A stretch of DNA of 64,000 nt from Hyphochytrium catenoides (lineage: Eukaryota > Protista > Hyphochytriomycota): NCBI GenBank assembly GCA_900088475.1, contig FLMG01002858.1:9024-73023 (forward strand), written 5' to 3'. The notes beneath the pieces are model-generated. The model saw only the letters and a program-made list of their open reading frames with translations, did not search any database and was not told the origin of the DNA. The translations under genes and the position numbers were made by a program. Shown one piece after another: positions 38,261-64,000 of the stretch (within the stretch, counting starts at the first letter, position 1; each line of letters starts with the position of its first letter).

Positions 38261-39170
38261 TGGTAAGAGGCATGAAAGGCACTCAGAGGCGGCACTTATC
38301 CGTGCGGAGAGCCGACTAGAGGGACTCACAGCGTTTCTTTATCAGCGTGCCGAGGAGGATACAAGGCACATAGAGCAAGAGGCAAAGAGATCAAAGTACT
38401 ACGACCTTGAGTGTGGTCTCTGTGATGTGTCACGTAGGTCACCCATTTAAGCCTTATCACCGCTGTATCTCTGCCTCTGGCTGAAACCTGCACTCCATGT
38501 CTTACAGGGACCTGCCATGGCCCACAAGACCTATACTTCTGGACCACTGACATCCGGTAAGCAGGGAATCACACTTATTTGGGCCAAAGAAGGCACTAAT
38601 GAGGTTAACCCTGCCTTCACCGCCATGTCATTACTGCTCTTTACAGAGTTCTCTCCCCGTGGGCACGCTCATGCATCCCTTCATCGTCATCCTTCTTGGT
38701 AACCCCGTTCCGCATGGCACTAATGTACTTATTCCTCATCCACGCGGGAGGCCTTTACTTCTTCTGCTCGAATTTGCGAATCATATGAGATTCGTCAGTA
38801 GAGTACCCTCGTTCTTGACCCAGAAGAAGGAGCTACTTATGTCTGGTCTGACAACTCATGGGAGGGATGGGAGCTTTTATGCAGTTCGAATAGCCCCACT
38901 CTTTCCACATCCTCTGAAGCGGTTGGCTCCTTCACTTAAGGGGTTGCCCCTTCTCCTCCTGTTAGATAATACCAACGAGGAGTGCTGAAGGAGCCTGTGA
39001 GACAGATAAGCCCTTATATTATTTAATGCTGATACCCCGGAACCTCCCAACTCCATAAGACATCTTACTTTGGCACTTATCGCACCGCACTCAAGCCCCT
39101 CCCATGTTCCTCATATATGAAAGCCTGAAATAAAGAGACCGTCTAGATATGACACCCGTCAGCTTCCCGT

Positions 39171-39273
39171 NNNNNNNNNNNNNNNNNNNNNNNNNNNNNN
39201 NNNNNNNNNNNNNNNNNNNNNNNNNNNNNNNNNNNNNNNNNNNNNNNNNNNNNNNNNNNNNNNNNNNNNNNNN
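39171..39273. other. Assembly gap (N run)
   Basis: 103 Ns. Confidence 1.
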
Positions 39274-42200
39274 TTCTCCTGCTTGACTTCTTCCGGGGCT
39301 CCCCGCGCGTTGGGCAGACGGGGTAGTTTCAGCTTCGCGATCGCTTTGAGGTTTATATTATCGATGGTCTCCGTTTGAACCTCCTTCATCAGCCCACTCT
39401 CTGCTTTCTTGCTTGAGGATCTAACGTTCAATCCTAGTATGCCACGCTTCTTAGGCGTCACGATAGGCAAATCTGAAGACTCCAGATCGATCTCTAGCAG
39501 ATCTTCTTCTGCATCTTCATCCTCTAGACGAAAGCTCGGCTTCCGGGGCTGTGGCGCTCCTCTCAACCGTGGGGTTAAGTCTTCCCTGAGACCTGAGAGG
39601 TTGTACTTTTCATAAAACGCGAATAGGAAGCCAATGAGATCCTCTCGCTTGACGCAGCCGATGAAGGTCATCGCCACCTTGTCGTCCACAATTGGAATGT
39701 GGCTAAGATGTGTCGTAGAGAGAAATCGGACTATCTCTGCATATGTGGTCGTCCTAGGTAATACGTCTAATTTACCAATCATAAGGTCCTTGGCCATACT
39801 TTGATGCTGAGAGTCGAAGCGCAGCTTGGGAAGGTAAGGCAACCCCTTACGCATCAAGATCTGGTCGTAGACAGAGTGGCTGATGGTCTGAGCGACAGCC
39901 ATGGAGACAACCGTACCCACCAAGGCCGGGAGGACGAAACGCAGCTGGCCCGTCAACTCCATGGCAATCACTTCGGGAAGAGACGACAAAGAGGCAGGAG
40001 AGAGGAGGTCAACGAGGAGTAGGAGAGCCAAAGTGGTCGTGGTTAGCGTAGGCACCTTCCTATCATAACGAGGGTGGAGTAAGGAGAAAAGCCGCTTCAA
40101 GACCCTAAACATTCCCTCAAATAGCAGAAAGACCAACGAAAGGGACATCGAGAGTGCGCCAACGCAGACAAAAGCAAAGGAAGCCCTAAAGGTTGCAACA
40201 GACAGCAGCAAAGAGAGAAGGAGCAAAGACCGTCGTAGCATACCTGCTGAGGAAAATGCATGGGTCACTGAGCCCAGCATGGCCGATGCTCCCACAACGG
40301 CGTAGCCTCCAGGCAAGATGCCTGCCGTCGGGAATAGCAGACTGATGACCTCCCCAAAGAGGCGTCCCCAGAGAGCGCCCGTTACAAAGTTGGGGAGAAA
40401 GTCTCCCGCTGGAATAGGAAGAGTGACGGACAGTGCGGTTGCAAGGGTTCTTACCACTATTGCTCCGGCCAGCGTTTGTAAGACCCCATTCTGAGATTTC
40501 CCCCAAATGTCCGGAAGCCCGCTCCCGCTAAGTAGTTGGTTTATCGTCTCTTCAAACGAGATCTGCATGTGGGGACCAGGCAGAAACAGGAGAGACGCTA
40601 CCACGATGGATATAAAGAGCGGCCAAAGGAGGGGGAACCGATGAAGAATGTGATACTGCAAAGTCCGAGCTTTATCAGCGAAGTAAATGTAGAATGGGCC
40701 AAAGAAACCGAGGACCAAACCCAAAAGGGCAAAGCTGATGAGCTCAATGTTGTTGAAGGAGCTGCTGGGAAAGTTGGTGGGATAGAGTGTTCGGAAGCTG
40801 TCTGCTTCCGCTCTGTGGAGGCTTGCATATAGTTGGGAGACCACTGCTCCCGTGACCGCGGCGAAGAATCCCTTATAATAGTTCTAGATTGGCAAAGCAG
40901 CACCAGAAGACAAATGATGGTGTAAGGAAGGCAAACTGGACAGAGAGGTAAAACGAGGTAGTTCCACGTACCGAGACGAGGTAGAAGGTGCTAGTGACTT
41001 CTATGGAAAACAAGACACCGCCAATCGGAGCCTTGAATGCTGAAGAGACCCCAACAGCGCAAGCCGCAATGTAGACCTGTCGCCTAAGTGTCTCGCTTTC
41101 ATATAACGTCTTAAAGTAGGCAAGCTTCTTCATCAGCTGGTGTGCGATAACGTTTGATATGTGGACGAACGGGCCTTCTCTTCCTACGGAGAGACCAGCT
41201 CCTAATGCGAGGACTAGTCCTATTGCCTTCGCAAAGAAAGTCCGTCTGCTAAGGTATCTCTCTGGCTCGCGGCGGACATCTCCAGAGAGGATGGCTTTCA
41301 TCTCAGGAATACCCGATCCAGCTTTATCGGTACCAGACAAAGCGTTAAAGCGGAGGGCGTAGTAGAAGGGTGATATGTGAGACCACGCAGCTTAAACAAG
41401 TTTGGGACATTAAAAAGAACTATTCATTGACGAGACCCATACAGAGAAGCCCACTGTCCCTCTATTTCTCACCTGCCATGGGGTCAATGAGATGAGTCCA
41501 CGCTACAGAGAGCCAACCGACCATCGCAGTGAAGAAGACAAATATAAGATAGCCATAGCCTGTGTATCCTTCAAGGCTCAGAAGGTAGCTCTTTGCTTGT
41601 AGCAGGAGGCTGATCACGTGGTTCGCAAAGTAATCCAGGGTTGCCACTGAGACGGGAGAGCACAGGCAGATAAACAGGAGACGTGAGGAGGAAAAAGAGG
41701 ACAAAGTGGAACATTGGACACTTAGCGGCATGCGGGGAAACAGTAGAAGTAAAGCTAGTACCTCCAAAGCCCAGGAGAAGAAGACAAAGCGTGGTCCGAC
41801 TCTGCCTCTTGCAGATCGTACTAAAACTTCTCAACGTCAGAACGGGCGGCGCCATGCCAAAGACATTGTCCCAGATATCCTGCTGCTGACTGCTTTCCTT
41901 CTATTGCCAATGTAGCGCAAGAGCAACCGATAAGTAGAAGAACAACGGTAGCCAACTGCTACATATATCGCGCCCATAAGAATAAGGGCGATGGGAGCAG
42001 GACCCCTTGAAGCAAGACAGAAGAGTGACGATTGAGGCTATGCGGTCATGGTAACGTACCTCGGTAGCAATATCTATGGCCATCCTCTTAGCCTCCTTAG
42101 CCAAATCTAACCGATAGCCGCCATAAAGTGTCCTATGATGCTCCTGCTTCTTCTCTTTCTCACTCTCGTTGGCTTTGAGAGAATGGATTGAGCTCATAAA

Positions 42201-51500: not shown

Positions 51501-53167
51501 TCACCGCTGCTTGGCTTCGTCTAGTAGCTCTATAAAGGCAGCTTGAATGGCCTTTACTACCGGATGTAGTTCTTTGCAAACGGCGGCGTCCAGAGTCACC
51601 CCAAGTCTAACCTGTAACGCCGACCAAAGTATCGTTTGTGTGAGAGCGGAGGTAACATTCTAGCTAGGCGTGATGTTGAGACGTGACAATTGCTGGTGTT
51701 ACCTTGCCGTCATAGCTGCTCATGCAACCTCCAGCTATCACTGCCCCTGATGCCGGTGGCCAGGCAAAGAGGTCGTGCACCTTCCTGCCACCAAAAAAGA
51801 TTGGCTTGACAGGACCAGGAACATTCGACAACACTGTGATGAGGAGGCAGTTTTTAGCTTTCTCTATAAAACTAGGTGCAACTGCGAAGTACAGGGATAA
51901 TATACTCACAGACAGTGGACTTATTAGTGAGCAGCTGCTGGAGAGCTGTGACCCATGATAGCGGCAAAATGCTTGCCGCTATGAGCAGAGCAAAGTACAT
52001 TGCTAGTGGTTCAGGACTTTTCTTCAGGTTCTCCATTCTCTGGTTGACCTTGGTGATAACGTCACCCACAGATTTACTCATGCTTGTAGGGAGGTCCACG
52101 CCTACGAGGCATAACTTGTTCTCAAGCTTGATGTTCTTCATCTCTCCAGACGTGCGCATGTTCACGGGAATGATGGCATTGCAGTCAACTAGCTCTTTGT
52201 ATCCAATAGCGTACCAGTGCTTCTGAAAGCCCCTCGCAACCACAGCCATGAAGACGTCATTGACGGTTACGTTGAACTTATTTTTGATGAGTTTTATGTC
52301 CTCCAGATCTATTGGAGGCAGCCAGCCGACGAGCCGCCGCCCTTCAGGCAGTGGGCCGTGGAAAGGGTTATTGTCTGTTCTGGAAAGGAGTTTCAGGAGC
52401 AGGACCATGGGAAGAGACAACGCGGAGTAAACAACCTTCATAAGGTTCCCCCCGTGCTTAGCGATAGAGTTCAGGGCTGATTTTTGAGACCGTCTCCCAC
52501 TGTTATGACCCACAGCCTTAGGCATGAGGTCTTCTAACTTTTCGCCATCCCTTGGAGGATCCATTATTCCCTGTAGTGCCAACCCCAAGAGCCCTACGCC
52601 GTCACTCAAAGCGTGATGGAACGTCCATAGCAACACAGTCCTTCCTCCCTCATAGTTCTCAATGCACTCATAAGCCCAAGGAGAAGCGTTTTGGGGCAGT
52701 ACGGAGCTATCAGAATACATTTCTCCAAGACGCTGTAGCGCTTGCTCCTCTGAAACCTCTTCCTGACCCGGGAGAGGTAAGAGCTTTGATGCCGTCATGT
52801 GCTTGTCAATAGAGAAGTCAGGATCCGGCCTAAAGTAAAAGTTTTCTCCTTGCAGCTTGATGATTGTGCAGCTAAGTCGTGGATATCTGGGTATAAGTCT
52901 CTCCAAATAGAGCTGCTTCACGGTATCCAGCGAAATTCTGTCACAGACCAAGAGGCCGACAGGAGTCATTGGATTCTTAGGATCATCTTGGGTCAAGTAT
53001 TTGTCAATCAAAGAAAGCTTCGTCCAGCCCTTGGCGACCAGCGGAGAGAAGAGAACATTTTTTGTCAGATAAACTGCCAGGACAATACCCGCTACCCACC
53101 AAATTCGCGCAAGAGCGTACGCTGTCAACAACGCGCTGAAGGGCAGAGCTAGGTCTGGGACAAACAT
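51501..53167 (-). CDS. Wax ester synthase/diacylglycerol acyltransferase (WS/DGAT), 3 exons
   Basis: Catalytic HHALSDG (HHxxxDG), TVNDVFMA, IPVNMR, LSNVPGP, SYDGKVRLGV; N-terminal hydrophobic anchor; last exon ends EAKQR* at 51501. Confidence 0.92.
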
Positions 53168-54985: not shown

Positions 54986-56480
54986 TTAAAAGAGTAACTT
55001 TCTAGACCACCGTATCGTGGCCTCAACGAGACGTTGGGGCAGACAAATGAGCTCCCACAGACCAGCAATGGCAAAAATAACTAGATGGCGAGCTCCATGA
55101 GGGAAGAAATGGACGGGAGTGTTCTGCGGATGATCCACAAATTTGATCTGCTTCCAGAGCAGCTTTGCTGCTTGCCTACTCTCGTCTTAGTAACTCTCCC
55201 ATGGTGAGGAAATTCAATAGGAACGGGAAACGCTTACCAATGAATCCAGAGCTGCACAGTCAAGGTCATGAGTGGCTGTTTTATAAGAATGGAACACAGG
55301 GATCCGAAACATATCTCTTTGCGCCGGAGATTTAACCCAACGGTAAAGCTTTGAATCTCCTGAACTGTAGGAGCAGTAGACCATAGATTTATAAGGAGTA
55401 CATAATACATGGACGGAGTTTCCCCCACCTGTTTCTTGGTGCTCTCCTTCTAGTTGGATGTCGTCAGGGCTATCGCTGGCCTTTGTTTCCGATGTGCGCC
55501 TCCAGCTAAGCGCTCGTACCTTCAGACTTTCTTCTGGAAGCCATAACTCCCAATCGTACTGCCAGAATTAACGTTAGGAGTGCTACGCATATGGTAGTGA
55601 GATTAGTTGATGACCACGTATTGATCAGCTCACCTCATGATTTAGATCCATGAATGGACTGACGTGGAAATCCTTCTTGAAGCGCCGCCGCCAGGATCGT
55701 GGTTGTAGTCTTCTCTCAGATGGGTTTCCTGTCTTGCCTCCAGTGGAGCCAGAAAAGTCCAGAACATACTGCCTGCGTTCCAGCCAAGGTGTGTTTGTGA
55801 CATCGAGGACTACAGCTTGGATGACATTGTCTGTCCATGAACAGCCCAAGTCAGCACCAAAAGCCAAAAGGTCATCACACGCCCCACACTTCGTGCCTTA
55901 TTATACTACCTTCATGTGGCGCAAAGCAGTAGTAAATGGTCACTGGATTGAAACAGTAGCCAAAATATCGCAGATGGGTTAGCATCCGGATAGGTCCTTC
56001 TGGCTTGAAACCCGCTTCCTTGACAACTACATCTCTTATCACCTCATCCAATGGAGTGGACGGATCGCCAACGTAATCTAGATGTACGTAGCTTTAGGTC
56101 CGGTAGGGACACCGCCTTAGCGTAGGTCGCACTTTGGTCTCACCTTCACGATGAAAGGCTGCAACGTTACGCCCATTGATAGACCAAAACCATCGTCCTT
56201 TGAAGATTTCATTGACCTCGGCAAGATCAATGTAGAGCATGGATAGAGAATAAGAGAACTTGTTGGATGCAGGAGAAAGTCCTGAGACTTGTGGGCGGTA
56301 ATGATACACACGGCCTTTATAGATGCAACTTTCCAGGGCACGTGGGCCGCTAGATTTAAGAGCGACGTTGCTCTTCAATGAGACAAGCAGGCGGCTCCCA
56401 GGCCACCATGATAGGGCCACACAGAACAAAAGGAGGACTATCAAGCTAATACCAAGCCCTCCTAGCCATTCGAAAGCCAT
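54986..56480 (-). CDS. DUF1365 family protein with N-terminal membrane anchor, multi-exon
   Basis: IYKGRVYHYR...FSYSLSMLYIDL, LTHLRYFGYCFNPVTIYYCF, DVTNTPWLER, KKDFHVSPFM, IHWQAAKLLWK. Confidence 0.87.
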
Positions 56481-57143
56481 CTTCCTGCGCGTTAACTTTG
56501 CTTGTAGAGGGGGGCAACCCTATAGCGGCCCAATACTGAGGCTCGCCCGAGGAAAGGCACGGAGATAACGGGCTTGTTAGCTGGATCATCAGAAGAAAAC
56601 AGAAGCTTTGTAGTGTTCGATCCTACCGTTCTCCCTGAGCTGCACAGGGAGACGAGCTGGCACCTTGAAGGAGCTAGCGGGACCTGTGACGATACATCTC
56701 TTCTTCGGCTACTAGAATTGGTCTGGTGCTTTATGGATGTGGAGAGGTTGAGGAAGCCGAAGAAAGAAACCAAGAACTCTTTAAAAACCAAGGGGACGAG
56801 CAGATTGTTGCGGAGCGAGGTAGTGAAAGGAAGCGGAGGCCCGCTCAATAAGGCCAGTGCAAGGGGAAGAAGTAGTCAGAAGAACGGCGTTGTCATCAAT
56901 CACCCTTCTTCCGTGGAACTGTCGATGATGGAAGGATTTATTGATGAGTGACTCTCGAGGGAGAAGTGTACTTCACAACGCGGAGGAAGTATGTGGTCAA
57001 GTGACCGCAAGGGGGCCGGAGGGCTAAGAAGTAAGAAGGACCTCGTCGCGGCGGCGAAGAGAGAAGAGAAAGATGCCGTGCTGCCAGTGTGCTGCTGACA
57101 TGAAGAATCAGAAGGCAGCGGCCAAAGCACAATAAAAGGATCC

Positions 57144-60100
57144 TCAAGTGGCAAACCAAACATAGGTAGGGCAGGCCGTAACGTTTTGGATCAGAGAAGG
57201 AAAGAGAAAAAAAAAGGAAGAGAAGAAAGAAGAAGAATTGTTGAGACTCTCAACTCTCTCTTCTTCGCCCTCTTCTTCCTCCATTCCACTTTCCTGGCCT
57301 TCACTTTCGTCTGCCTGATCACCTCTCCGTCTCTTATACGTTCTTTTTGGTCTCGTGACCCTCGACGTGGGCAACTTGGCCCTCTTGTGGAAAATTTCTG
57401 TACAAGACGTACGAGCAGGAGGGATTGCCGTGGAACAGAGGAATACGCAGCAGACTGGGCAATAGTAAACCGTTTCTCTGTCGCAGTACTCGCACTGCCT
57501 AGGTCTCGTCACAGGTTTGCCATCCAGAATCTTTGGCCTTGTTGACAAGTGGCCGGGAGTATGGAGTCTAGTTGTAAGGAAGTTGTGAGCATGAGAGTTG
57601 CTAAAGTCAGATGACAGGGACGAAACTCAAACCTTAACTTTATGCCAGCTTCATGGGTGGCAAAGAACCTCAGCTTCTTATATTTGGGCACTTGAGCTCG
57701 CAGAGATTGCACAGCACCAGCATCAGTGATAGCCGGGGCTAGTGGAGCCCTGCTGTCGTCATCCAAGTCGTCTGGCATCTCTGATGGAAGGTTGATTGAC
57801 TCCAGCAGCTTCTGACGTAAATACTCTACGTCACAAAGCTCTTCTCCAACCTCCATCATAAAATCGTTGATGGACTCCACGTGGTTGAATGCATCTCGGA
57901 GCTTACTCAGCGTAGAAGCAGTAGCCTGCAAGTTGACAAGCAGATCTCTTCGCTGCCACATCCTCCATATAATTGCAGCATTGATGAGGACTGTGAAGAT
58001 ACTACGAACGACAAATTTCCTCTCAAAATCCAAGGCGCCAGTATTTGGAGGAAACCCCGCATGATACTCACTTGATCCGTCCAGACCCCCTTTTGTCTTG
58101 CTGTAAAGGGCCTGAGCTGCATGGCGATAAAGTAGCACAGGTTTGGAAGGGCCGTTTTCATTGATGTAGGCGTCCACCATTTTCCAGAAGCGGAAATGAG
58201 AACAGATAATCTGTTTATCTTCTCCATTGAGAAAGGTTGGAAACTCCAAAGTAGGCTGGTGAGCCCACCCCAGGGTCTCTCTCAGACATGATAGACTGGC
58301 CCCAAAGACTCTTAGCAGTTCAGCACTTGCATGCACGAAGACCACATAGCCAATGCCAGTTGTAGTAGCTTTGACATAGAGAGCGTGGTCGATATTGCAA
58401 ACAAACATTTGGTGCAATACTTGCGCACGATGATCCTGAGGCACAGCTGTCCACCAGATGTCGTCCCCGACCTCACACAGGAGAATCTGTCCGCTCCTAG
58501 AGCTTACTCTGCCCAGGCTTTCAACAGTGCTGGATGCCACGGCTGTCTTCAGCTCCACTGTCGCAAGAACATCTTGATCTGAGCCGGGAGGGCGGATGAC
58601 AGCGATGGCGTCAGGAGATGCCGCCAGCCACGGCAACTCTCTGTGTTGGAGAAGACCGACTTCACAAAGCGCAATAACAAAGTCTTTCCGTCCTCTAAGG
58701 GCATCTAGAATCATACCCTACAACAACTCATAGTTAGTTAAGACTACCTCCGCATGAAAGACTGAGCTGGCCACTCACCTCGTTCTTTGTTCCTTGTCTC
58801 ATCTCATCTGTAGATGTTGCCTTTGAGTACCAGCTCTCACGAAACTTAGATAATAGCTCTTCGTTGGTAGGGAGAGGCACCCGTATACCCGAATCATCTT
58901 TGTGGAGAAGAGACCGCGCCCGTTCATCATACCTGGAGACAAAACTAGCCATCGTGCCAGTGCATCTGTGGGCGCGCGCTACAAACCAATCTGCACAACG
59001 CTGACCGGGGGTCAATGCTTTAACTCTGGTGTTAAGTTTGGTCTCTAATAGCCGCCGCGCGTCTGATTTGTCCTCCGACGGGTAGAACAAGCAGTCGCTT
59101 GCCTTACTCTGGGTTCCTAGAAAATATTATTAGCTAATCATTCAGCCTCTGCTGTATAATAAGGAACAAACTAACCCTTGATGAAGACTGCGGTCCACTT
59201 GTGAAGGAAGGGCTCAATCGTAGGCCACGAAATGTAGAAACGTAACACCTTGGTGGATGCCTGGTCTCCTCTTTCCCTCACCGCCAGCGCGTGGAGCTTC
59301 TGAGACGAAGCTCTACTTTCGTTTGCTACAGGTATAGTCTTATACGCACTGTATACCGTAGGGCCCAACAGAGGTCCATCAGGAATGATCCATTTCGAGG
59401 GCCGCTCATCCGCAGTCTCTATTGATGGCTCCAAGGTATCCTCAGCTGCAGCTGGACTTATTGGGTTGAGGTGCAGAAGGGATGATGGTTCGCTAGATGA
59501 TCAGGGACAATAAATGCGCAACCAAGGCCCCTACATGGCAAGCAAGCACTTTAGATAATGAAAGGCCGTGCCGGTGCTGGCAAACTTACATTCCCATGAC
59601 CGTCTCAACTAACTTGGGCTTGCAATACCCTCGATCCATGGTTATAATGCCCCCTCGCCAGCTTCCAGTTTGCTGCTCCTTCAAACTCTCTAGCAGTTTC
59701 TTCACCGACTGGTCTTGATCCGCACCCCGACGCTTCAGGCGGATAGCAAGCACCACGCGTGTAAAACTATCAGCAATAACGTCCATGCTGTGTCCTTCTT
59801 TTCCAGCTTTCCTAGTGTTAAGGCTTTTGACCTACGCATGAGTCAATATTCAGAATTCGCTGAGAGGCCGTCGTCAGCGTAATTACTTATGCTACCTGAA
59901 CGTCTTGGGACCTGGACGCGATGAGCTCGTCATCCAATACTAGTGTTCCATTCTTCATGTCGAGCAGTATATGACGTGACTCTTCCATTAGCAAGCTCTC
60001 AAAGGAACTTAGGTTAGGAGTCAAGTCCCCCTGCGCTAACCATCCACAGTCCCAGTCGCCAGTCCTGCCCTCAGATGTATAGGCACGCAGAGAGCGAAGA

Positions 60101-61023
60101 ATTTCTTTATATCGTTGTTGTGGCAAAACGGTCCATTCTAACTTGCAGAGCTTTTGATAAGCCTTGGAGGGAGAACATACGAAACAGCTGAGACCAATTA
60201 GTGTACCAATAAACCGCATGAACTCAACAGGGTTCGTCCGCAATGCCTCTTGAGGCATGGCTCCGTTACATAAACGAACCAACCGATGCAAAGCAGGCTC
60301 AAGCAGGAGTAGCACAAAGTCCGCACGCGTTGCAGGTACATGGGGTTGGCGGCTTTCTGGATGATTAGCTCCTGCTACTCCTAACCCTTCCAGCTTCCTC
60401 TCCAGCTTAGCCAAGATGGCTTGGTGATGCCGAAGAAACCGCTCACTGATTGCTTCTTTTAGGAACTCGTCCTCATCAACCAGCTTCCATTCAGGAATGT
60501 GCTCTGTAGTCCATCCAGCTGTCGCCTGATTGCGCTTAGCTTGTCGCCTCGCCGCCCCAGGTATGTTATTATTGTCACTCTGACTCCCAGGAGAAGGGGA
60601 AGATCGTCTTCCTCCTCGTCCTCGCCCCCGCCCTCTTCCTGGACTTTCACCCCTTCTAGAACCCCGCCCTCCCCTTGTTGCGGGACTGCTGCTTCTTCCT
60701 CTGCCTCGTCTTGATATCCTTTCCTGCTCCTGGCTCCTTTCTCCTCCTTCTTCTGACTGAGAGAAGACGACCGAGGAGCCAATCGAACCCAACACGTCAC
60801 CTTCAAGTCCACCATCAGCTTGAGAAGCATCACTCGCACCACCCACGAATGGAGGAAGTACAGGGTAAGGGGAAGAAGAAGAAGAAGAGAAATGCTGTTG
60901 CTGACTCTCCTCCTCCAGTGTATCGGCTTGGGACACAAAGGGGCCATCAGCACCTACACTATCTCCTCGTCCTCCTCCCCATTCACGATCACTCTCTGCC
61001 ACCTTCTGCTCATCGTCCATCAT
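57144..61023 (-). mobile_element. piggyBac-like DDD transposase with inserted YqaJ/lambda-exonuclease domain and C-terminal Cys-rich domain (6 exons; possible frameshift ~59470)
   Basis: Exons ~61023-59896, 59831-59590, 59530-59176, 59116-58779, 58717-57633, 57567-57144. piggyBac motifs EFMRFIGTLI, RYKEILRSL, LVLDDE (D1), ITMDRGY (D2), YSKTKGGLD (D3), CEYC...YYCPVCCVFLC...CTEIFH. YqaJ motifs GQRCADWFVAR...TGT, MRQGTKNE, WLAASPDA, VELKT, QVLHQM. Confidence 0.8.
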
Positions 61024-61310: not shown

Positions 61311-61392
61311 AAATTACCGTATTATAATACGGTAATCACAACCTTCCTGGGGGAGATCTGAAACCAATTACCGTATTATAATACGGTAATTT
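61311..61392. repeat. Two copies of the perfect 24-bp palindrome ATTACCGTATTATAATACGGTAAT
   Basis: Copies at 61313-61336 and 61367-61390 (the second extends to a 26-bp palindrome, 61366-61391), 54-bp period. Confidence 0.95.
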
Positions 61393-62280
61393 TACAGTAG
61401 GGATATCGGTCCCGTGAAGGCGATAGCATGCGTGGAGCGTTAGTCGTTTGCAGACGTCATTAGTTATAATTCTTGCTGCACAAGAACGATGCTTTCCCTG
61501 CTGCTCTCATTAGCTTGGTCTCCAAAGTCAATGGAAATATCTGTAGACTCCATGCCGGGGCTCTGGGCCTCCCAAAGTCGCTATGATGGCAGAGAAGAGG
61601 AACTAAGACCACTTTCACGAGCAGCAAAGAAGACCCCAATACTCTTTAAGGCCAATCTTAACCTTTCCTGCTGACCATATTATCACAAACGAGAACTACT
61701 ATGCAATCTATCCTCCTACTATGGTGTTTTGCTGTTCAGAATCAGGATAACTGGCAGCTGTGAAGGTATTATTCAAAATGCAAACCAGTGGTCTCTTGGT
61801 GGCCGTCTGAAAAGGGACTATCTGCGCTACTGCAGTCCATGATGATTGTTGGAATAGTATGACAACCGTTTTACTAGACAGTGAGATCGAAGAGACAGTA
61901 CACTGGAATTACTTAAGGCCCCATCCTTGCAGCAGTCGCAACTCAGCGTTTCGGTTAGCTGGAGAGAGTGAAAAGTAGAGTAAGAGTGATGAGCTTGTAT
62001 TGCGGAGTACTATGGCCCTCTTAATTATTATGTTCATGCATTTTAAACATAGGCACCTACTGTAACGATGGGATGGTGGATCAACAACAAGAAGCTCCAT
62101 GGCGCTAGCTATGGCGGAGAGTTTATTCTCGTATTTTTGCTTCAGTCTTCTCACGATGAATGATAGAAGTTCTATGGTGCGTTTTTATTATTATTCTGAG
62201 AGAGGTAGGTCGGGGGTACCACGCCGTACGCTTCTTTCATTCCACCAGAACTGCTGACTTATGACTTAAGCTGACGTGGA

Positions 62281-64000
62281 TCAATCCATTTGCTGTTGTT
62301 GTCTTCTTCTCTTTTGCGGCCCATTGTCGTAAAGGTCGCGACAAACTTGACAGAGGCAAGGAGTCCAATTAGCCTGCCGCTTAGTTCGCTCCTCAGTACC
62401 ATAAACAGGTCCTTGCCGAGGGTTAGGGGAATGGTCCTGCCGCGGTACTCGGCAACTGAACCAAGAGCCCCTCCTACTCCTATTGGATTCCTCGCTCAAG
62501 GTTGTCACTTCTGAGGCGCCGGCGGCTTGTTGCTCCGGTACCTGACTAGTAGCAGGATTCGGCTCGGGAGCGGTCCCGTCGTTGTTGCTGGATGCAACAA
62601 CCTCTGTCGTCAGCGAAGGCTGTTTATGGAGCGATAACCAAGGTTGCATCCTATAATAATGCCCACAAATGCTGCATCGTTGGGGCTGACGGACCCGCTT
62701 ACGTGTTCCTTCGCCGTGGTTGAACACTACTGTTGGAGGTGGTGTTATTCCCAGCCTAGGTGCTGCATTTACCCCGCCAATCTCCCCATTTTCTTCGCCA
62801 TCTTCTACATCATCATCGACATTGATATCTACCACAGGGGGAAAGAGCTCATGGAGGTGTGAAGGAATACCTTCTAGCATGAGTGGTGGCAGATGGACAG
62901 GAAGGTTAGGGTTAGATAGGTCCCGCAACCGCTGGCTTATCGTGCGTACTGCGTCTCCGTTCTGCCGGGAAAGATGATACCTTCGCAGCCTCTGTAGAGT
63001 CTTGCGGTAAAAGGCTCTAAGAGCATGCTTGGACTTGGGAAAGACAGATTTGCCAGCGGCAAGGTCCTGGTCACAGCTTTGGTTCCACTTCAGCGCTAGA
63101 GCTTCAAAGTCAATATCATCTTCGCCATCACCAGGATGCATGGATCCAATGAGCTCAAAGAATTTTCTCTGCTCATCTTTACCGTACACCGTGGCAATGT
63201 TTCTGCGTACAAAGAGCTCTGGATTTGTCCTTAGCCTCAGGGAAGTAGGGGGCTCGTTGTGCTCCAAATTAACACCCTCTCTAACGACACCTTCATTCTC
63301 CATAATGTTATTGCCTTCCATCGCTTCTTCTTCCTCTACCGCTCTATTGCTTCCATCCGTCTCCTCCTCTTCATCAAGATCGTTATCTATAGAGAAATCC
63401 CCCACCTCAATGCCGAAGTCCATACAGTCCTCATTCACTGAGGCCACTGCCTGTGTACTTCTCCAACCGAAGAGCGGAGAGCTTTCCACCCTTACCTCAT
63501 CGTAGTCGACGCCATAAAAGCCTTCAGTAAGCTCCAGAATTGTCTCCACCAGCGCAAAGTTGTAGACTCCTGTTAGGTTGGAAAAGCCCCGGTAGCGGAC
63601 ATCAATACGATGATTCCAGCGGAAGTTGAACTCTTTCAGGATAAGGATCAGAAGGTCTAGAGACATGAAGCGAGAGACTATAAGTGCTCGTATGTGTCTA
63701 TGGTAACCTTCAATGTCACTAGTTCCTCGCCGGCACCTAAATATGGGAAGCCCCCTCTTATCACGACCAATCTGGACGTACAGCGGTACCTCATCTGGAT
63801 CAGAAAGGCAGCCCTTAAGTACATGTCGCTTCAGGTTCCTCCAGGCCGTCCAGGTACTAGGTCGAAAGAGCTTCTCGTTTGATGTGGGGTCTATCGTCTG
63901 GGGAAGAACTAGTTCCACTTCTTGCAGTCGCCGAAGGAGGAGGGGAGGCGATGGAATCTTTCTTCTCATGTGCGGAAGCCAGCGGCTAAATTGCCCATAG
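62281..64000 (-). mobile_element. C-terminal part of a second, unrelated transposase-like ORF (GCLSDP...RCRRGTxxxEGYH family), 5' end beyond window
   Basis: The frame is open from the window edge (YGQFSRWLPHMRRKIPSPP...), intronless, ~570 aa. Motifs GCLSDPDEVPLY, LPIFRCRRGTSDIEGYH and EFNFRWN resemble TE-derived proteins of fungi, fish and oomycetes (DUF6729-associated, Mutator-like TNxxE-type catalytic Glu). Later KWNQ...KSKHALRAFY helix block and CxxCGH...CxCxxC. Superfamily not certain. Confidence 0.65.

What the first reader, a model, noticed from the sequence alone, without database searches (positions are those of the whole stretch)
57144..61023. piggyBac-type transposase with a complete lambda-exonuclease (YqaJ) domain inside its catalytic core
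Seen: splicing six GT-AG exons gives a ~1190-aa protein. It has piggyBac N-terminal helices, D1 (LVLDDE ~59930), D2 (TMDRGY ~59630), D3 (YSKTKGGLD ~58085) and the C-terminal Cys-rich domain. Between D2 and D3 lie ~450 aa carrying every PD-(D/E)xK YqaJ motif intact (QRCADWFVAR, GTKNE, ASPD, ELK, QVLHQM). Established: T. ni piggyBac has only ~100 aa between D346 and D447, excises precisely via hairpins and needs no exonuclease; YqaJ/lambda exonucleases are 5'-3' resecting enzymes paired with annealases in phage recombination. Inference: a two-nuclease transposase that could resect donor or target ends, for example to drive homology-directed copy-back or transposition not restricted to TTAA. Lambda-exonuclease fusions are known in some Kolobok elements, and atypical piggyBac relatives (Repbase piggyBacX) exist in oomycetes and red algae, so novelty has to be checked against those.
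Basis: partly seen in the sequence, partly recalled or inferred. Interest (0 to 1): 0.85.

Follow-up and report, generated by a model that had tools for sequence, protein, structure and literature searches.

The report
piggyBac-type transposon with nested lambda-exonuclease
This is a slightly broken copy of a jumping gene from a widespread but undescribed branch of the piggyBac family, whose cutting enzyme carries a second, complete DNA-chewing enzyme (lambda-exonuclease type) inside its catalytic core and which inserts at ATAT instead of the classic TTAA.

Summary
Five GT-AG introns give an open 1177-aa reading (61023..57144, minus strand).

The architecture is a conserved family, not a chance juxtaposition or a nested gene. 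About 600 cluster representatives match exon 5. About 29 full-length proteins (900-1400 aa) are colinear with the whole model, among them intronless single ORFs and transcripts. Named hosts are Plasmodiophora, Gracilariopsis, Durusdinium and Hondaea.

A family profile hits T. ni piggyBac at E 1.9e-19. An AlphaFold model of a homolog matches piggyBac at Z 27 (residues 248-1023). It matches lambda exonuclease at Z 15 (608-892), nested inside the piggyBac match. Both active sites are (near-)invariant.

New here: complete elements carry ATAT|CCCTA...TAGGG|ATAT ends, so the target duplication is ATAT, not TTAA. Most (L003, L006, L001) also have paired ~24-bp subterminal palindromes.

This copy is damaged. 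Homologs show that exon 3 starts at 59530. A net -1 frameshift then gives TAA at 59460-58. The 3' end of the element is missing.

The role of the exonuclease is only inferred. No open paper describes the fusion. RepeatMasker's unpublished 'PiggyBac-X' class probably covers it. The scan flagged five more copies in this genome.

The parts
61403..61406 (-). ATAT flank next to the 5' terminus (the family's target-site duplication)
   Evidence: The same ATAT flanks both ends of the complete elements L003, L005 and L006.
61392..61402 (-). 5' terminal inverted repeat tip, CCCTACTGTAA
   Evidence: Similarity to the related element L001 starts exactly here. L001, L003, L005 and L006 all begin CCCTA and end TAGGG.
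61367..61390 (.). Subterminal 24-bp perfect palindrome 1 (ATTACCGTATTATAATACGGTAAT), a candidate transposase (Cys-rich domain) binding site
   Evidence: Expected by chance 0.00. The same layout is seen in L001, L003 and L006.
61313..61336 (.). Subterminal 24-bp perfect palindrome 2, 54 nt from the first
   Evidence: Spacing is also 54 nt in L001 and 55 nt in L006.
59896..61023 (-). Exon 1: disordered RG-rich N-terminus, the piggyBac N-terminal helical (dimerisation/DNA-binding) region and D1 (D364, codon 59934-59932)
   Evidence: (DDE_Tnp_1_7, E 1.6e-3).
59590..59831 (-). Exon 2: beta2-beta4 of the RNase H-like core with D2 (D442, codon 59636-59634)
59461..59530 (-). Conserved start of exon 3 (beta5 and the 'HPF' block, GLGCAFIVPDHLANHHPFCTSTQ).
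   Evidence: 55% identity to Plasmodiophora P0151 residues 217-238, E 5e-9. Family alignment.
59458..59460 (-). In-frame TAA created by a net -1 frameshift relative to the close relative L002
   Evidence: L002 reads HPFCTSTQYIPPQ...KWIIPD in a single frame.
59176..59457 (-). Rest of exon 3, now in another frame: piggyBac insertion-domain beta strands (KWIIPDGPLLGP...)
58779..59116 (-). Exon 4: N-terminal part of the YqaJ domain (QRCADWFVAR..TGT, the 5'-phosphate-binding Arg motif; GTKNE)
57633..58717 (-). Exon 5: YqaJ catalytic core (D711 58612-58610; E730 58555-58553; K732 58549-58547; QVLHQ), then the piggyBac D3 (D888, codon 58081-58079) and C-terminal helices
   Evidence: (YqaJ, E 4.4e-4). 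dN/dS 0.115 against L002.
57144..57567 (-). Exon 6: Cys-rich domain (57494-57381), an acidic tail and the stop. Similarity to L001 ends at about 57286.
56481..57143 (-). Space before the next host gene (DUF1365), where the 3' palindromes and the TAGGG|ATAT end should lie. None is present.

Best explanation
The locus is one copy of an autonomous DNA transposon from a distinct, ancient lineage of the piggyBac superfamily.

Shown:
- The single transposase has the full piggyBac layout: N-terminal helical DNA-binding/dimerisation region, DDD RNase H-like core with its beta-rich insertion domain, C-terminal helices, and a cross-brace Cys-rich domain.
- A complete lambda-exonuclease/YqaJ PD-(D/E)XK domain is nested just before the strand-helix that carries the third Asp.
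- Both catalytic sites are conserved family-wide.
- Complete relatives have CCCTA...TAGGG termini and 4-bp ATAT duplications. Most (L003, L006, L001) also have two ~24-bp palindromes near each end.
- This particular copy is probably dead. It has a net -1 frameshift in exon 3 and has lost its 3' end.

Inferred mechanism:
- The DDD core performs piggyBac-style cut-and-paste at the self-complementary tetranucleotide ATAT.
- The palindromes are binding sites for dimers of the Cys-rich domain.
- The nested nuclease is an active, 5'-phosphate-dependent 5'->3' exonuclease acting on ends made in the transpososome. Most likely it resects the broken donor flanks. Repair then goes through homologous recombination and restores the element, giving a net copy gain. 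Abortive repair would give internal-deletion derivatives.
- I put about 0.35 on this specific role. The confidence given below refers to the identity and architecture.
For: Gene model.

Family:
- 608 cluster representatives at E<=1e-3 with exon 5 alone.
- About 29 full-length proteins are colinear with residues ~120-1135 of the model.

piggyBac identity:
- Family profile against PDB sequences: 6x67 at E 1.9e-19, in three stretches that flank the insert and include the Cys-rich domain; piggyBat 9c0f at E 6.5e-10.
- Homolog P0013 passes the Pfam DDE_Tnp_1_7 threshold.
- AlphaFold model: pLDDT 74, pTM 0.69.
- That model against 6x67_C: Z 27.4, 383 residues aligned, model 248-1023 to piggyBac 117-523.

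Nested YqaJ:
- Lambda exonuclease 3slp, Z 15.3, model 608-892 to chain 14-226; LHK-Exo Z 14.
- Foldseek probability 1.00.
- YqaJ Pfam E 4.4e-9 on P0003.
- Sub-profile against LHK-Exo at E 3.4e-5 and R354 at E 1.2e-5, aligning QR..WF..R..T.S, G..E, SPDG and EIK.

Conservation: D405, D749, E714 and N713 are invariant. D485, D929, E770, K772 and Q815 are conserved in at least 90% of sequences (alignments).

One polypeptide: single intronless ORFs in L005-L007 and transcript-derived P0013/P0152.

Mobility:
- ATAT|CCCTA...TAGGG|ATAT in L003 (Plasmodiophora), L005, L006 and L001.
- L001 is an internal-deletion derivative with both ends. It is 99.95% identical to the full-length-type L002 over their overlap.
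- Five further copies in this genome were noted by the scan (unverified).

Selection: dN/dS 0.115 at dS 0.73.

Damage in this copy: frameshift; no 3' end.
Against: - No transcript evidence: no RNA run was listed.
- The frameshift could not be checked in reads. It could be an assembly error.
- The structure was predicted for a 28%-identical homolog, not for the window protein, because a spliced protein cannot be passed by reference.
- The window pieces alone fall just under the Pfam thresholds (18.3 against 22.4; 21.0 against 22).
- No biochemical data exist for any member, so nuclease activity, polarity and substrate are inferred from conserved motifs.
- Lambda exonuclease works as a toroidal trimer. 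A domain nested in a (presumably dimeric) transposase may not form one, so processive resection is uncertain.
- ATAT rests on four complete elements plus one end. No empty site was examined.
Confidence: 0.85

Rival explanations
1. Same element, different role for the nested nuclease. The YqaJ domain cleaves or trims the 5' (non-transferred) strand at the transposon ends. The protein would then work like Tn7's TnsA (PD-(D/E)XK, 5' ends) plus TnsB (DDE, 3' ends) in one chain. This would replace or supplement the piggyBac hairpin route.
For: - The PD-(D/E)XK site is as conserved as the DDD site.
- The domain sits at the insertion-domain position of the core, next to the catalytic helix. In related transposases that position contacts the cleaved end (established knowledge for Tn5 and Hermes).
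- The fourth Asp of canonical piggyBac (D450 in GGVDTLDQ) is not conserved here (GG.DG.TQ).
- TnsA is a transposition PD-(D/E)XK nuclease (PMC3424549).
Against: - The fold and motifs are specifically lambda-exonuclease/YqaJ, including the Arg motif that binds a terminal 5'-phosphate. They are not restriction-endonuclease/TnsA-like.
- The piggyBac core is otherwise complete (383 of ~407 core residues superpose). The palindromic 4-bp target is the hallmark of the hairpin/seamless-excision chemistry.
Confidence: 0.25
2. The window copy is intact and functional. Either the apparent frameshift is an assembly error, or the 59492 acceptor is really used and the 1177-aa product works.
For: - Apart from this one site every exon is open, and all catalytic residues of both nucleases are present.
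- Purifying selection is strong against the relative.
- The alternative acceptor has a good polypyrimidine tract and AG.
Against: - The site is not a homopolymer run.
- The alternative splice deletes or garbles a block that is conserved family-wide, including the near-invariant P of 'HPF'.
- It needs a 97-nt intron where the other four are 59-65 nt.
- The 3' TIR and palindromes are absent, so the copy could not be mobilised even with a good protein.
Confidence: 0.12
3. A domesticated host gene derived from such a transposase. It would be immobile but selected for a cellular function.
For: - No 3' end in the window.
- Low dN/dS.
- Introns are conserved with the relative.
Against: - The 5' TIR tip, the ATAT flank and both palindromes are still perfect.
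- There is a premature stop in the conserved frame.
- The relative's copies have transposon ends and a deletion derivative.
- Several copies were noted in the same genome.
Confidence: 0.04
4. The YqaJ exons belong to a separate gene, or to a secondary insertion nested in a piggyBac gene.
For: In this window the YqaJ region lies on its own exons (exon 4 and part of exon 5).
Against: - Exon 5 is one uninterrupted reading frame that contains both the YqaJ catalytic core and the piggyBac D3.
- Dozens of relatives at 23-31% mutual identity keep the same order in single ORFs and in transcripts.
- An AFDB cluster representative matches model residues 247-1140 in one chain.
Confidence: 0.01

Closest known systems
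Canonical piggyBac transposase/transposon (T. ni piggyBac, PDB 6X67/6X68; piggyBat 9C0F; Pfam DDE_Tnp_1_7)
   Same: - Same overall fold and domain order (Z 27.4 and 24.4; profile E 1.9e-19).
- DDD triad at equivalent positions.
- C-terminal Cys-rich domain.
- TIR tip 5'-CCCTA.
- 4-bp self-complementary target duplication.
- Subterminal repeats near the ends.
   Different: - About 285 residues of lambda-exonuclease fold are inserted before the D3 helix. D2-D3 spacing is about 445 aa against 101.
- The target duplication is ATAT, not TTAA.
- The fourth Asp (D450) is not conserved.
- The subterminal repeats are paired perfect palindromes of about 24 bp.
- The hosts are protists and algae.
RepeatMasker/Dfam class 'DNA/PiggyBac-X' (Repbase piggyBacX)
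   Same: Probably the same lineage. The label is reported for Plasmodiophora brassicae repeats (bioRxiv 10.1101/2025.07.30.667784), and P. brassicae carries a complete member of this family (L003).
   Different: I could not read Repbase or Dfam records. No paper in the searchable library describes the class, its YqaJ domain or its ATAT target. The equivalence is an inference.
KolobokE and ISL2EU transposons
   Same: They are eukaryotic DDE transposons that also carry a lambda-exonuclease-like/YqaJ nuclease of unknown role (PMC9587614; PMC4122938; PMC4482050).
   Different: They belong to other transposase superfamilies. The nuclease lies downstream of the transposase domain (KolobokE) or in a second ORF (ISL2EU), not nested in the catalytic core.
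Dada transposons with a nested DEDDy exonuclease
   Same: An exonuclease domain is inserted between the second catalytic Asp and the last catalytic motif of a DDE transposase (Laccaria and Ectocarpus families; PMC3706591).
   Different: Different superfamily. The exonuclease is a different fold with opposite polarity (DnaQ-like, 3'-5').
Tn7 TnsA/TnsB
   Same: Works-like analogy: a PD-(D/E)XK nuclease cooperating with a DDE transposase on the two strands of each end.
   Different: Bacterial, and made of two separate proteins. TnsA is a restriction-endonuclease-like enzyme, not a YqaJ exonuclease. There is no homology beyond the superfamily fold.
Lambda exonuclease / LHK-Exo / mimivirus R354
   Same: Same fold (Z 15.3, 14.1 and 12.5) and the same motifs: W..R..TAS-like, G..E, SPDG, E.K, Q...Q.
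   Different: Here it is a domain inside another enzyme. The elements encode no annealase partner. Toroidal trimerisation is doubtful.

Membership tests
piggyBac superfamily transposase | Significant sequence-profile similarity to piggyBac transposases | tested here: met
   Family profile against 6x67 at E 1.9e-19. Homolog P0013 scores 29.9 bits on DDE_Tnp_1_7 against a cut-off of 22.4. Window exon 1 alone scores 18.3 bits, under the cut-off.
piggyBac superfamily transposase | DDD triad on an RNase H-like fold, at positions equivalent to D268, D346 and D447 | tested here: met
   D364, D442 and D888 of the window model align with invariant or near-invariant family columns and with piggyBac D268 and D447 in the HMM alignment. 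The fold match is Z 27.4 on the homolog.
piggyBac superfamily transposase | C-terminal Cys-rich (cross-brace zinc finger) domain | tested here: met
   Profile positions 937-999 align with piggyBac 528-594 and piggyBat 520-576. The window has CEYC...CPVC...C...C..FH at 57494-57381.
piggyBac superfamily transposon | TTAA target-site duplication | tested here: not met
   ATAT flanks both ends in L003, L005 and L006. It also flanks L001 and the window's 5' end. It is still a 4-bp palindrome.
piggyBac superfamily transposon | Short TIRs starting 5'-CCC | tested here: met
   CCCTAC, CCCTAG or CCCTAA at all termini examined.
piggyBac superfamily transposon | Both termini present in this copy | tested here: not met
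   Only the 5' end is present (61402). There is no second palindrome pair or TAGGG|ATAT anywhere in the 64-kb window.
YqaJ / lambda exonuclease (PF09588) | PD-(D/E)XK catalytic residues (D ... E.K) plus the G..E and Q motifs | tested here: met
   The window has SPD (D711), ELK (E730, K732), GTKNE and QVLHQ. These are invariant or conserved in at least 90% of the family. They align to LHK-Exo and R354.
YqaJ / lambda exonuclease (PF09588) | Pfam score above the gathering threshold | tested here: inconclusive
   Window exon 5 alone (a partial domain) scores 21.0 against 22. Homolog P0003 scores 37.2 and passes. P0013 and P0022 score 21.9.
YqaJ / lambda exonuclease (PF09588) | Lambda-exonuclease fold over the whole domain | tested here: met
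   On the homolog model: 3slp_A at Z 15.3, 204 residues aligned, chain 14-226 of 226. Foldseek TM by target 0.64.
YqaJ / lambda exonuclease (PF09588) | Arg that binds the terminal 5'-phosphate (lambda exonuclease R28) | tested here: inconclusive
   The motif DWF..R...TGT aligns with LHK-Exo EWFAARLGKVTAS. Equivalence to R28 rests on my knowledge of lambda exonuclease and was not superposed at residue level.
YqaJ / lambda exonuclease (PF09588) | Paired single-strand annealing protein (Red-beta/RecT type) in the same unit | tested here: not met
   Complete elements L005 (256-4630) and L006 (491-4720) hold only the one long ORF.
YqaJ / lambda exonuclease (PF09588) | 5'->3' exonuclease activity; toroidal trimer | not testable with these tools
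   Needs biochemistry or an oligomer structure.
KolobokE / ISL2EU (YqaJ-bearing transposons) | Kolobok or PIF/IS5-type transposase core | tested here: not met
   The best sequence and fold matches are piggyBac and piggyBat. The nuclease is nested, not downstream or in a second ORF.

The most novel reading that the evidence does not exclude
The nested lambda-exonuclease makes these elements a mechanistically new kind of cut-and-paste transposon. One polypeptide would couple DDD-catalysed excision and integration at ATAT with 5'-strand resection or cleavage. Excision would then be obligatorily followed by homology-directed restoration of the donor (quasi-replicative piggyBac transposition), or the second-strand cleavage would be done TnsA-style instead of through hairpins. 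If so, the family would give a natural 'transposase + resection' enzyme with a non-TTAA specificity.
Probability: 0.3. Interest if true: 0.85.

Novelty: new variant of a known kind. Interest (0 to 1): 0.66.

Why it matters
piggyBac is one of the best understood and most used eukaryotic transposases. Its hallmarks are TTAA targeting and seamless, hairpin-mediated excision that needs no other nuclease.

This is an old, widespread lineage. Named members come from Rhizaria, red algae, dinoflagellates and a labyrinthulomycete, with an Oomycota-labelled Atlas cluster as a weaker lead. It keeps the piggyBac core but adds a strictly conserved second nuclease inside it, and it has switched to ATAT. That shows the chemistry at transposon or donor ends can be extended within one protein.

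It makes two questions testable: what accessory nucleases do in eukaryotic transposition (also open for KolobokE, ISL2EU and Dada), and what sets piggyBac target choice.

It also explains a set of database proteins annotated only as 'YqaJ viral recombinase domain-containing protein'. The twin palindromes noted upstream of this gene are explained as part of the element's 5' end.

Tried and rejected
- The search for related loci in genome contigs found nothing. That collection holds only bacteria and archaea.
- The search for homologous proteins with the full-length alignment A2 returned only the query. Low-complexity words probably swamped the candidate list. A region-restricted search with P0010 worked.
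- A CLC-channel ORF was searched to name the organism. The best hits were only 32-38% identical, to animals, Capsaspora and Vannella, so the host stays unidentified. Sequencing-run names are coded.
- The look-up of sequencing runs was busy three times. It then listed DNA runs holding 0.95-0.96 of the sampled words and no RNA run.
The frameshift, the introns and the copy number therefore remain unverified in reads.
- Searches for a 3' terminus in the window, by palindrome and by TIR pattern with mismatches, found only the 5' end.
- Inverted-repeat search around the gene found no flanking TIR pair.
- L004 showed no recognisable termini. For L007 the scan gave only repeated TACGATATATCGTA-type subterminal matches. 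No CCCTA end was seen within the contig, which starts about 325 nt before the ORF.
- An extra small intron to rescue the frame in exon 3 was considered and rejected. There is no GT upstream of the TAA in the right place.
- No SAP domain was detected in this copy's N-terminus, although other copies and an Atlas cluster carry one.
- Literature searches for piggyBac with YqaJ, lambda exonuclease, ATAT or PiggyBac-X found no description of the architecture.


Full report
**1. What is in the sequence**

The minus strand between 61023 and 57144 holds six open blocks. They can be joined by five GT-AG introns of 64, 97, 59, 61 and 65 nt. The result is an open 1177-aa reading that starts at ATG 61023 and stops at 57146-57144.
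- D1 LVLDDEL, 59943-59923
- D2 ITMDRGY, 59645-59625
- QRCADWFVAR..TGT, 59003-58953
- GTKNE, 58793-58779
- ASPDA, 58621-58607
- VELKT, 58558-58544
- HRAQVLHQM, 58432-58406
- D3 YSKTKGGLD, 58105-58079
- Cys-rich domain, 57494-57381

Pfam on the separate exons gives only sub-threshold hits:
- DDE_Tnp_1_7 on exon 1, E 1.6e-3
- DDE_Tnp_1 on exon 2
- YqaJ on exon 5, E 4.4e-4

The case therefore rests on comparison with relatives.

**2. It is a conserved family**

An exhaustive HMMER search with exon 5 alone found 608 cluster representatives at E<=1e-3, and 266 at <=1e-10. Exon 5 contains both the YqaJ catalytic core and the piggyBac D3 in one uninterrupted frame.

About 29 of the hits are proteins of 900-1400 aa. 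They align colinearly with residues ~120-1135 of the window model at 26-33% identity. The members include:
- Plasmodiophora brassicae CEO94475.1/SPQ96822.1
- Gracilariopsis chorda PXF43106.1/PXF39884.1
- Durusdinium trenchii CAK9090653.1
- a Hondaea fermentalgiana gene model
- MMETSP0963/0964 transcript products
- many single-ORF metagenomic or SRA contigs

Databases name them at most 'YqaJ viral recombinase domain-containing protein'. One Gracilariopsis protein is called 'PiggyBac transposable element-derived'. An Atlas look-up puts the nearest large cluster (1206 aa, 20% with a SAP domain) mainly in Oomycota. Ordinary piggyBac clusters come next, and YqaJ clusters after them. AFDB cluster representatives match the homolog model over residues 247-1140 in a single chain.

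**3. Both folds, one inside the other**

A profile of 23 full-length members hits T. ni piggyBac (6x67) at E 1.9e-19 in three stretches:
- profile 111-287 to piggyBac 130-307
- profile 789-872 to piggyBac 435-515
- the Cys-rich domain, profile 937-992, to piggyBac 528-594

The same search hits piggyBat (9c0f) at E 6.5e-10 and the lambda-exonuclease homolog LHK-Exo (3syy) at E 2.5e-3. About 500 profile positions sit where piggyBac has about 128 residues.

A spliced protein cannot be passed by reference. I therefore folded the transcript-derived homolog P0013 with the family alignment. The model has mean pLDDT 74, or above 85 outside the disordered first 216 residues, and pTM 0.69.

Foldseek gives piggyBac at E 2.5e-6 and lambda exonuclease at E 1.5e-4, both with probability 1.00. 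The VIA second look gives:

| Match | Z | Model range | Chain range |
|---|---|---|---|
| piggyBac 6x67_C | 27.4 | 248-1023 | 117-523 (383 aligned) |
| piggyBat 9c0f_C | 24.4 | 249-1016 | 86-476 |
| Tn5 transposase | ~17 | | |
| lambda exonuclease 3slp_A | 15.3 | 608-892 | 14-226 |
| LHK-Exo | 14.1 | | |
| mimivirus R354 | 12.5 | | |

The exonuclease fold is thus wholly nested inside the piggyBac fold. It follows the beta strands that correspond to piggyBac's own insertion domain, and it precedes the strand-helix with D3 (secondary structure).

A sub-profile of the insert matches R354 (E 1.2e-5) and LHK-Exo (E 3.4e-5). The QR..WF..R..T.S, G..E, SPDG and E.K motifs align.

In the 23-sequence alignment (blocks):
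- invariant: D405 (D1), D749 (SPD), N713/E714, Q639 and W644
- conserved in at least 90%: D485 (D2), D929 (D3), E770, K772 and Q815

Both active sites have been kept together across proteins that are only 20-31% identical to P0013, the first sequence of the alignment.

**4. It is a transposon, and it targets ATAT**

A close relative is available from two ENA metagenome scaffolds, at 80% nucleotide and 83% protein identity.
- L002 carries the full-length type.
- L001 is 99.95% identical to L002 where they overlap. It lacks the part equivalent to residues ~203-582, with a simple junction.
- L001 has both ends: ATAT|CCCTACT..., two copies of the palindrome TTACCGTATTATAATACGGTAA near each end, and ...AGTAGGG|ATA at the scaffold edge.

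The window shares the 5' end exactly:
- ATAT at 61406-61403
- CCCTACTGTAA at 61402-61392
- perfect 24-bp palindromes at 61367-61390 and 61313-61336

Upstream of that point the similarity stops. These palindromes are the 'twin palindromes' that the scan noted separately.

Distant members have the same organisation:
- Plasmodiophora L003: ccATAT|CCCTAGCGCA ... TGCGCTAGGG|ATATcg, 5114 bp, with two TAGGTGCAATTAATTGCACCTA palindromes at each end
- L005: ATAT|CCCTAATGTT ... AACATTAGGG|ATAT, 4375 bp
- L006: ATAT|CCCTACTGTTT ... AAACAGTAGGG|ATAT, 4230 bp, with two TTACGATCAGTATACTGATCGTAA palindromes at each end

So the family has piggyBac-like CCCTA termini, but a 4-bp ATAT duplication instead of TTAA. 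ATAT is also self-complementary. The logic of seamless excision through complementary 4-nt overhangs could therefore be kept (inference from the established piggyBac mechanism).

A 2017 survey of the superfamily mentions ATAT only as a rarity. It discarded sequences with long insertions (PMC5381638).

**5. This copy is damaged**

All homologs have a conserved block after D2, for example Plasmodiophora GFNVAFIMPEHLLNYHPFCSES. In the window that block is encoded in the frame entered through the acceptor at 59531/59530, which gives a 59-nt intron like the others. It reads GLGCAFIVPDHLANHHPFCTSTQ (55% identity, E 5e-9) and then runs into TAA at 59460-59458.

L002 reads straight through in one frame (HPFCTSTQYIPPQ...KWIIPD). 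The window is a net 1 nt shorter there.

The open 1177-aa model needs the acceptor at 59492. That drops beta5 and reads the 'HPF' stretch out of frame.

Downstream, similarity to L001 stops at about 57286. The 660 bp before the next gene (a DUF1365 protein starting at 56480) hold no palindrome and no TAGGG|ATAT, and neither does the rest of the window.

The rest of the ORF is clean. Exon 5 has dN/dS 0.115 at dS 0.73 against L002. The lesions are therefore recent compared with the divergence.

I could not check the frameshift in reads.

**6. How it probably works**

Shown:
- a piggyBac-type core with an intact triad in the family
- a lambda-exonuclease-type domain with intact catalytic and end-binding motifs
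- one polypeptide
- transposon ends with palindromic repeats
- ATAT duplications
- a deletion derivative

Inferred:
- The DDD core carries out piggyBac-style cleavage and strand transfer at ATAT.
- The palindromes bind pairs of Cys-rich domains, as the internal repeats of T. ni piggyBac do (established knowledge).
- The nested nuclease digests 5'-phosphorylated strands at ends made during transposition.

My preferred role (about 0.35) is resection of the donor flanks. The break would then be repaired by recombination from a sister or homolog that still carries the element. That raises copy number and, when repair aborts, leaves internal deletions such as L001.

The main rival (about 0.25) is a TnsA-like role in cleaving or trimming the non-transferred strand.

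There is no annealase in the elements. A toroidal trimer like that of lambda exonuclease seems unlikely for a nested domain.

**7. Comparison and novelty**

The closest known relatives are canonical piggyBac and piggyBat. The fold, triad, Cys-rich domain and CCC termini are shared. The TTAA criterion is not met.

Accessory nucleases are known in other eukaryotic DNA transposons:
- KolobokE has a lambda-exonuclease-like domain downstream of the transposase (PMC9587614).
- ISL2EU has a YqaJ protein as a second ORF (PMC4122938 and PMC4482050).
- Some Dada elements have a DEDDy 3'-5' exonuclease nested between D2 and the last catalytic motif (PMC3706591).

The principle is therefore not new. The piggyBac-YqaJ combination, its nested position and its ATAT target are not described in any paper I could search.

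RepeatMasker has a class 'DNA/PiggyBac-X', which is reported for P. brassicae. It most likely corresponds to this lineage, so curators may already hold consensus sequences. I could not read them.

I rate this a new variant of a known kind. As a family it is interesting. This particular copy is a decaying member.

The scan's first readers noted five other such genes in the same genome (unverified). That fits a multi-copy family.

Noticed in passing
window 62281-63969 (-): A 562-aa intronless ORF lies just beyond the element's 5' end. It has no Pfam hit. Language-model features place it nearest a diatom-dominated hypothetical cluster (0.92), then DUF6729 and KDZ/CxC transposase-associated clusters. 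It is probably another transposon-derived gene.
   Followed up: partly
window 61313-61336 and 61367-61390: The 'twin perfect 24-bp palindromes' noted separately by the scan (s1-333943) are the subterminal repeats of this transposon's 5' end. Equivalent pairs occur at both ends of L001, L003 and L006.
   Followed up: yes
L001:1-3474: A metagenome scaffold holds an internal-deletion derivative of the close relative. It lacks the D1-D2 core region but has both termini. The junction at ~1177 shows at most a few bases of microhomology.
   Followed up: partly
window 55875-56480 (-): A DUF1365-family host gene starts 660 bp downstream of the transposase stop, on the same strand. Its first exon is at 56094-56480.
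   Followed up: partly
P0038 (Hondaea fermentalgiana GBG26396.1) and P0003 (P. brassicae SPQ96822.1): Two database annotations look wrong. A 2180-aa 'cytochrome c peroxidase, mitochondrial' contains a piggyBac-YqaJ segment and is probably a fused gene model. The Plasmodiophora copy is labelled '(mitochondrion)'.
   Followed up: no
window 39159-40844 (-) and 51872-53167 (-): These are host genes: a CLC chloride channel with a CBS domain, and a WS/DGAT acyltransferase. The channel's best named relatives are only 32-38% identical (animals, Capsaspora, Vannella). The source organism therefore belongs to a poorly sampled lineage.
   Followed up: partly
family alignment A2, D3 motif: The fourth Asp of canonical piggyBac (D450 in GGVDTLDQ) is replaced throughout this family (GG.DG.TQ).
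   Followed up: no
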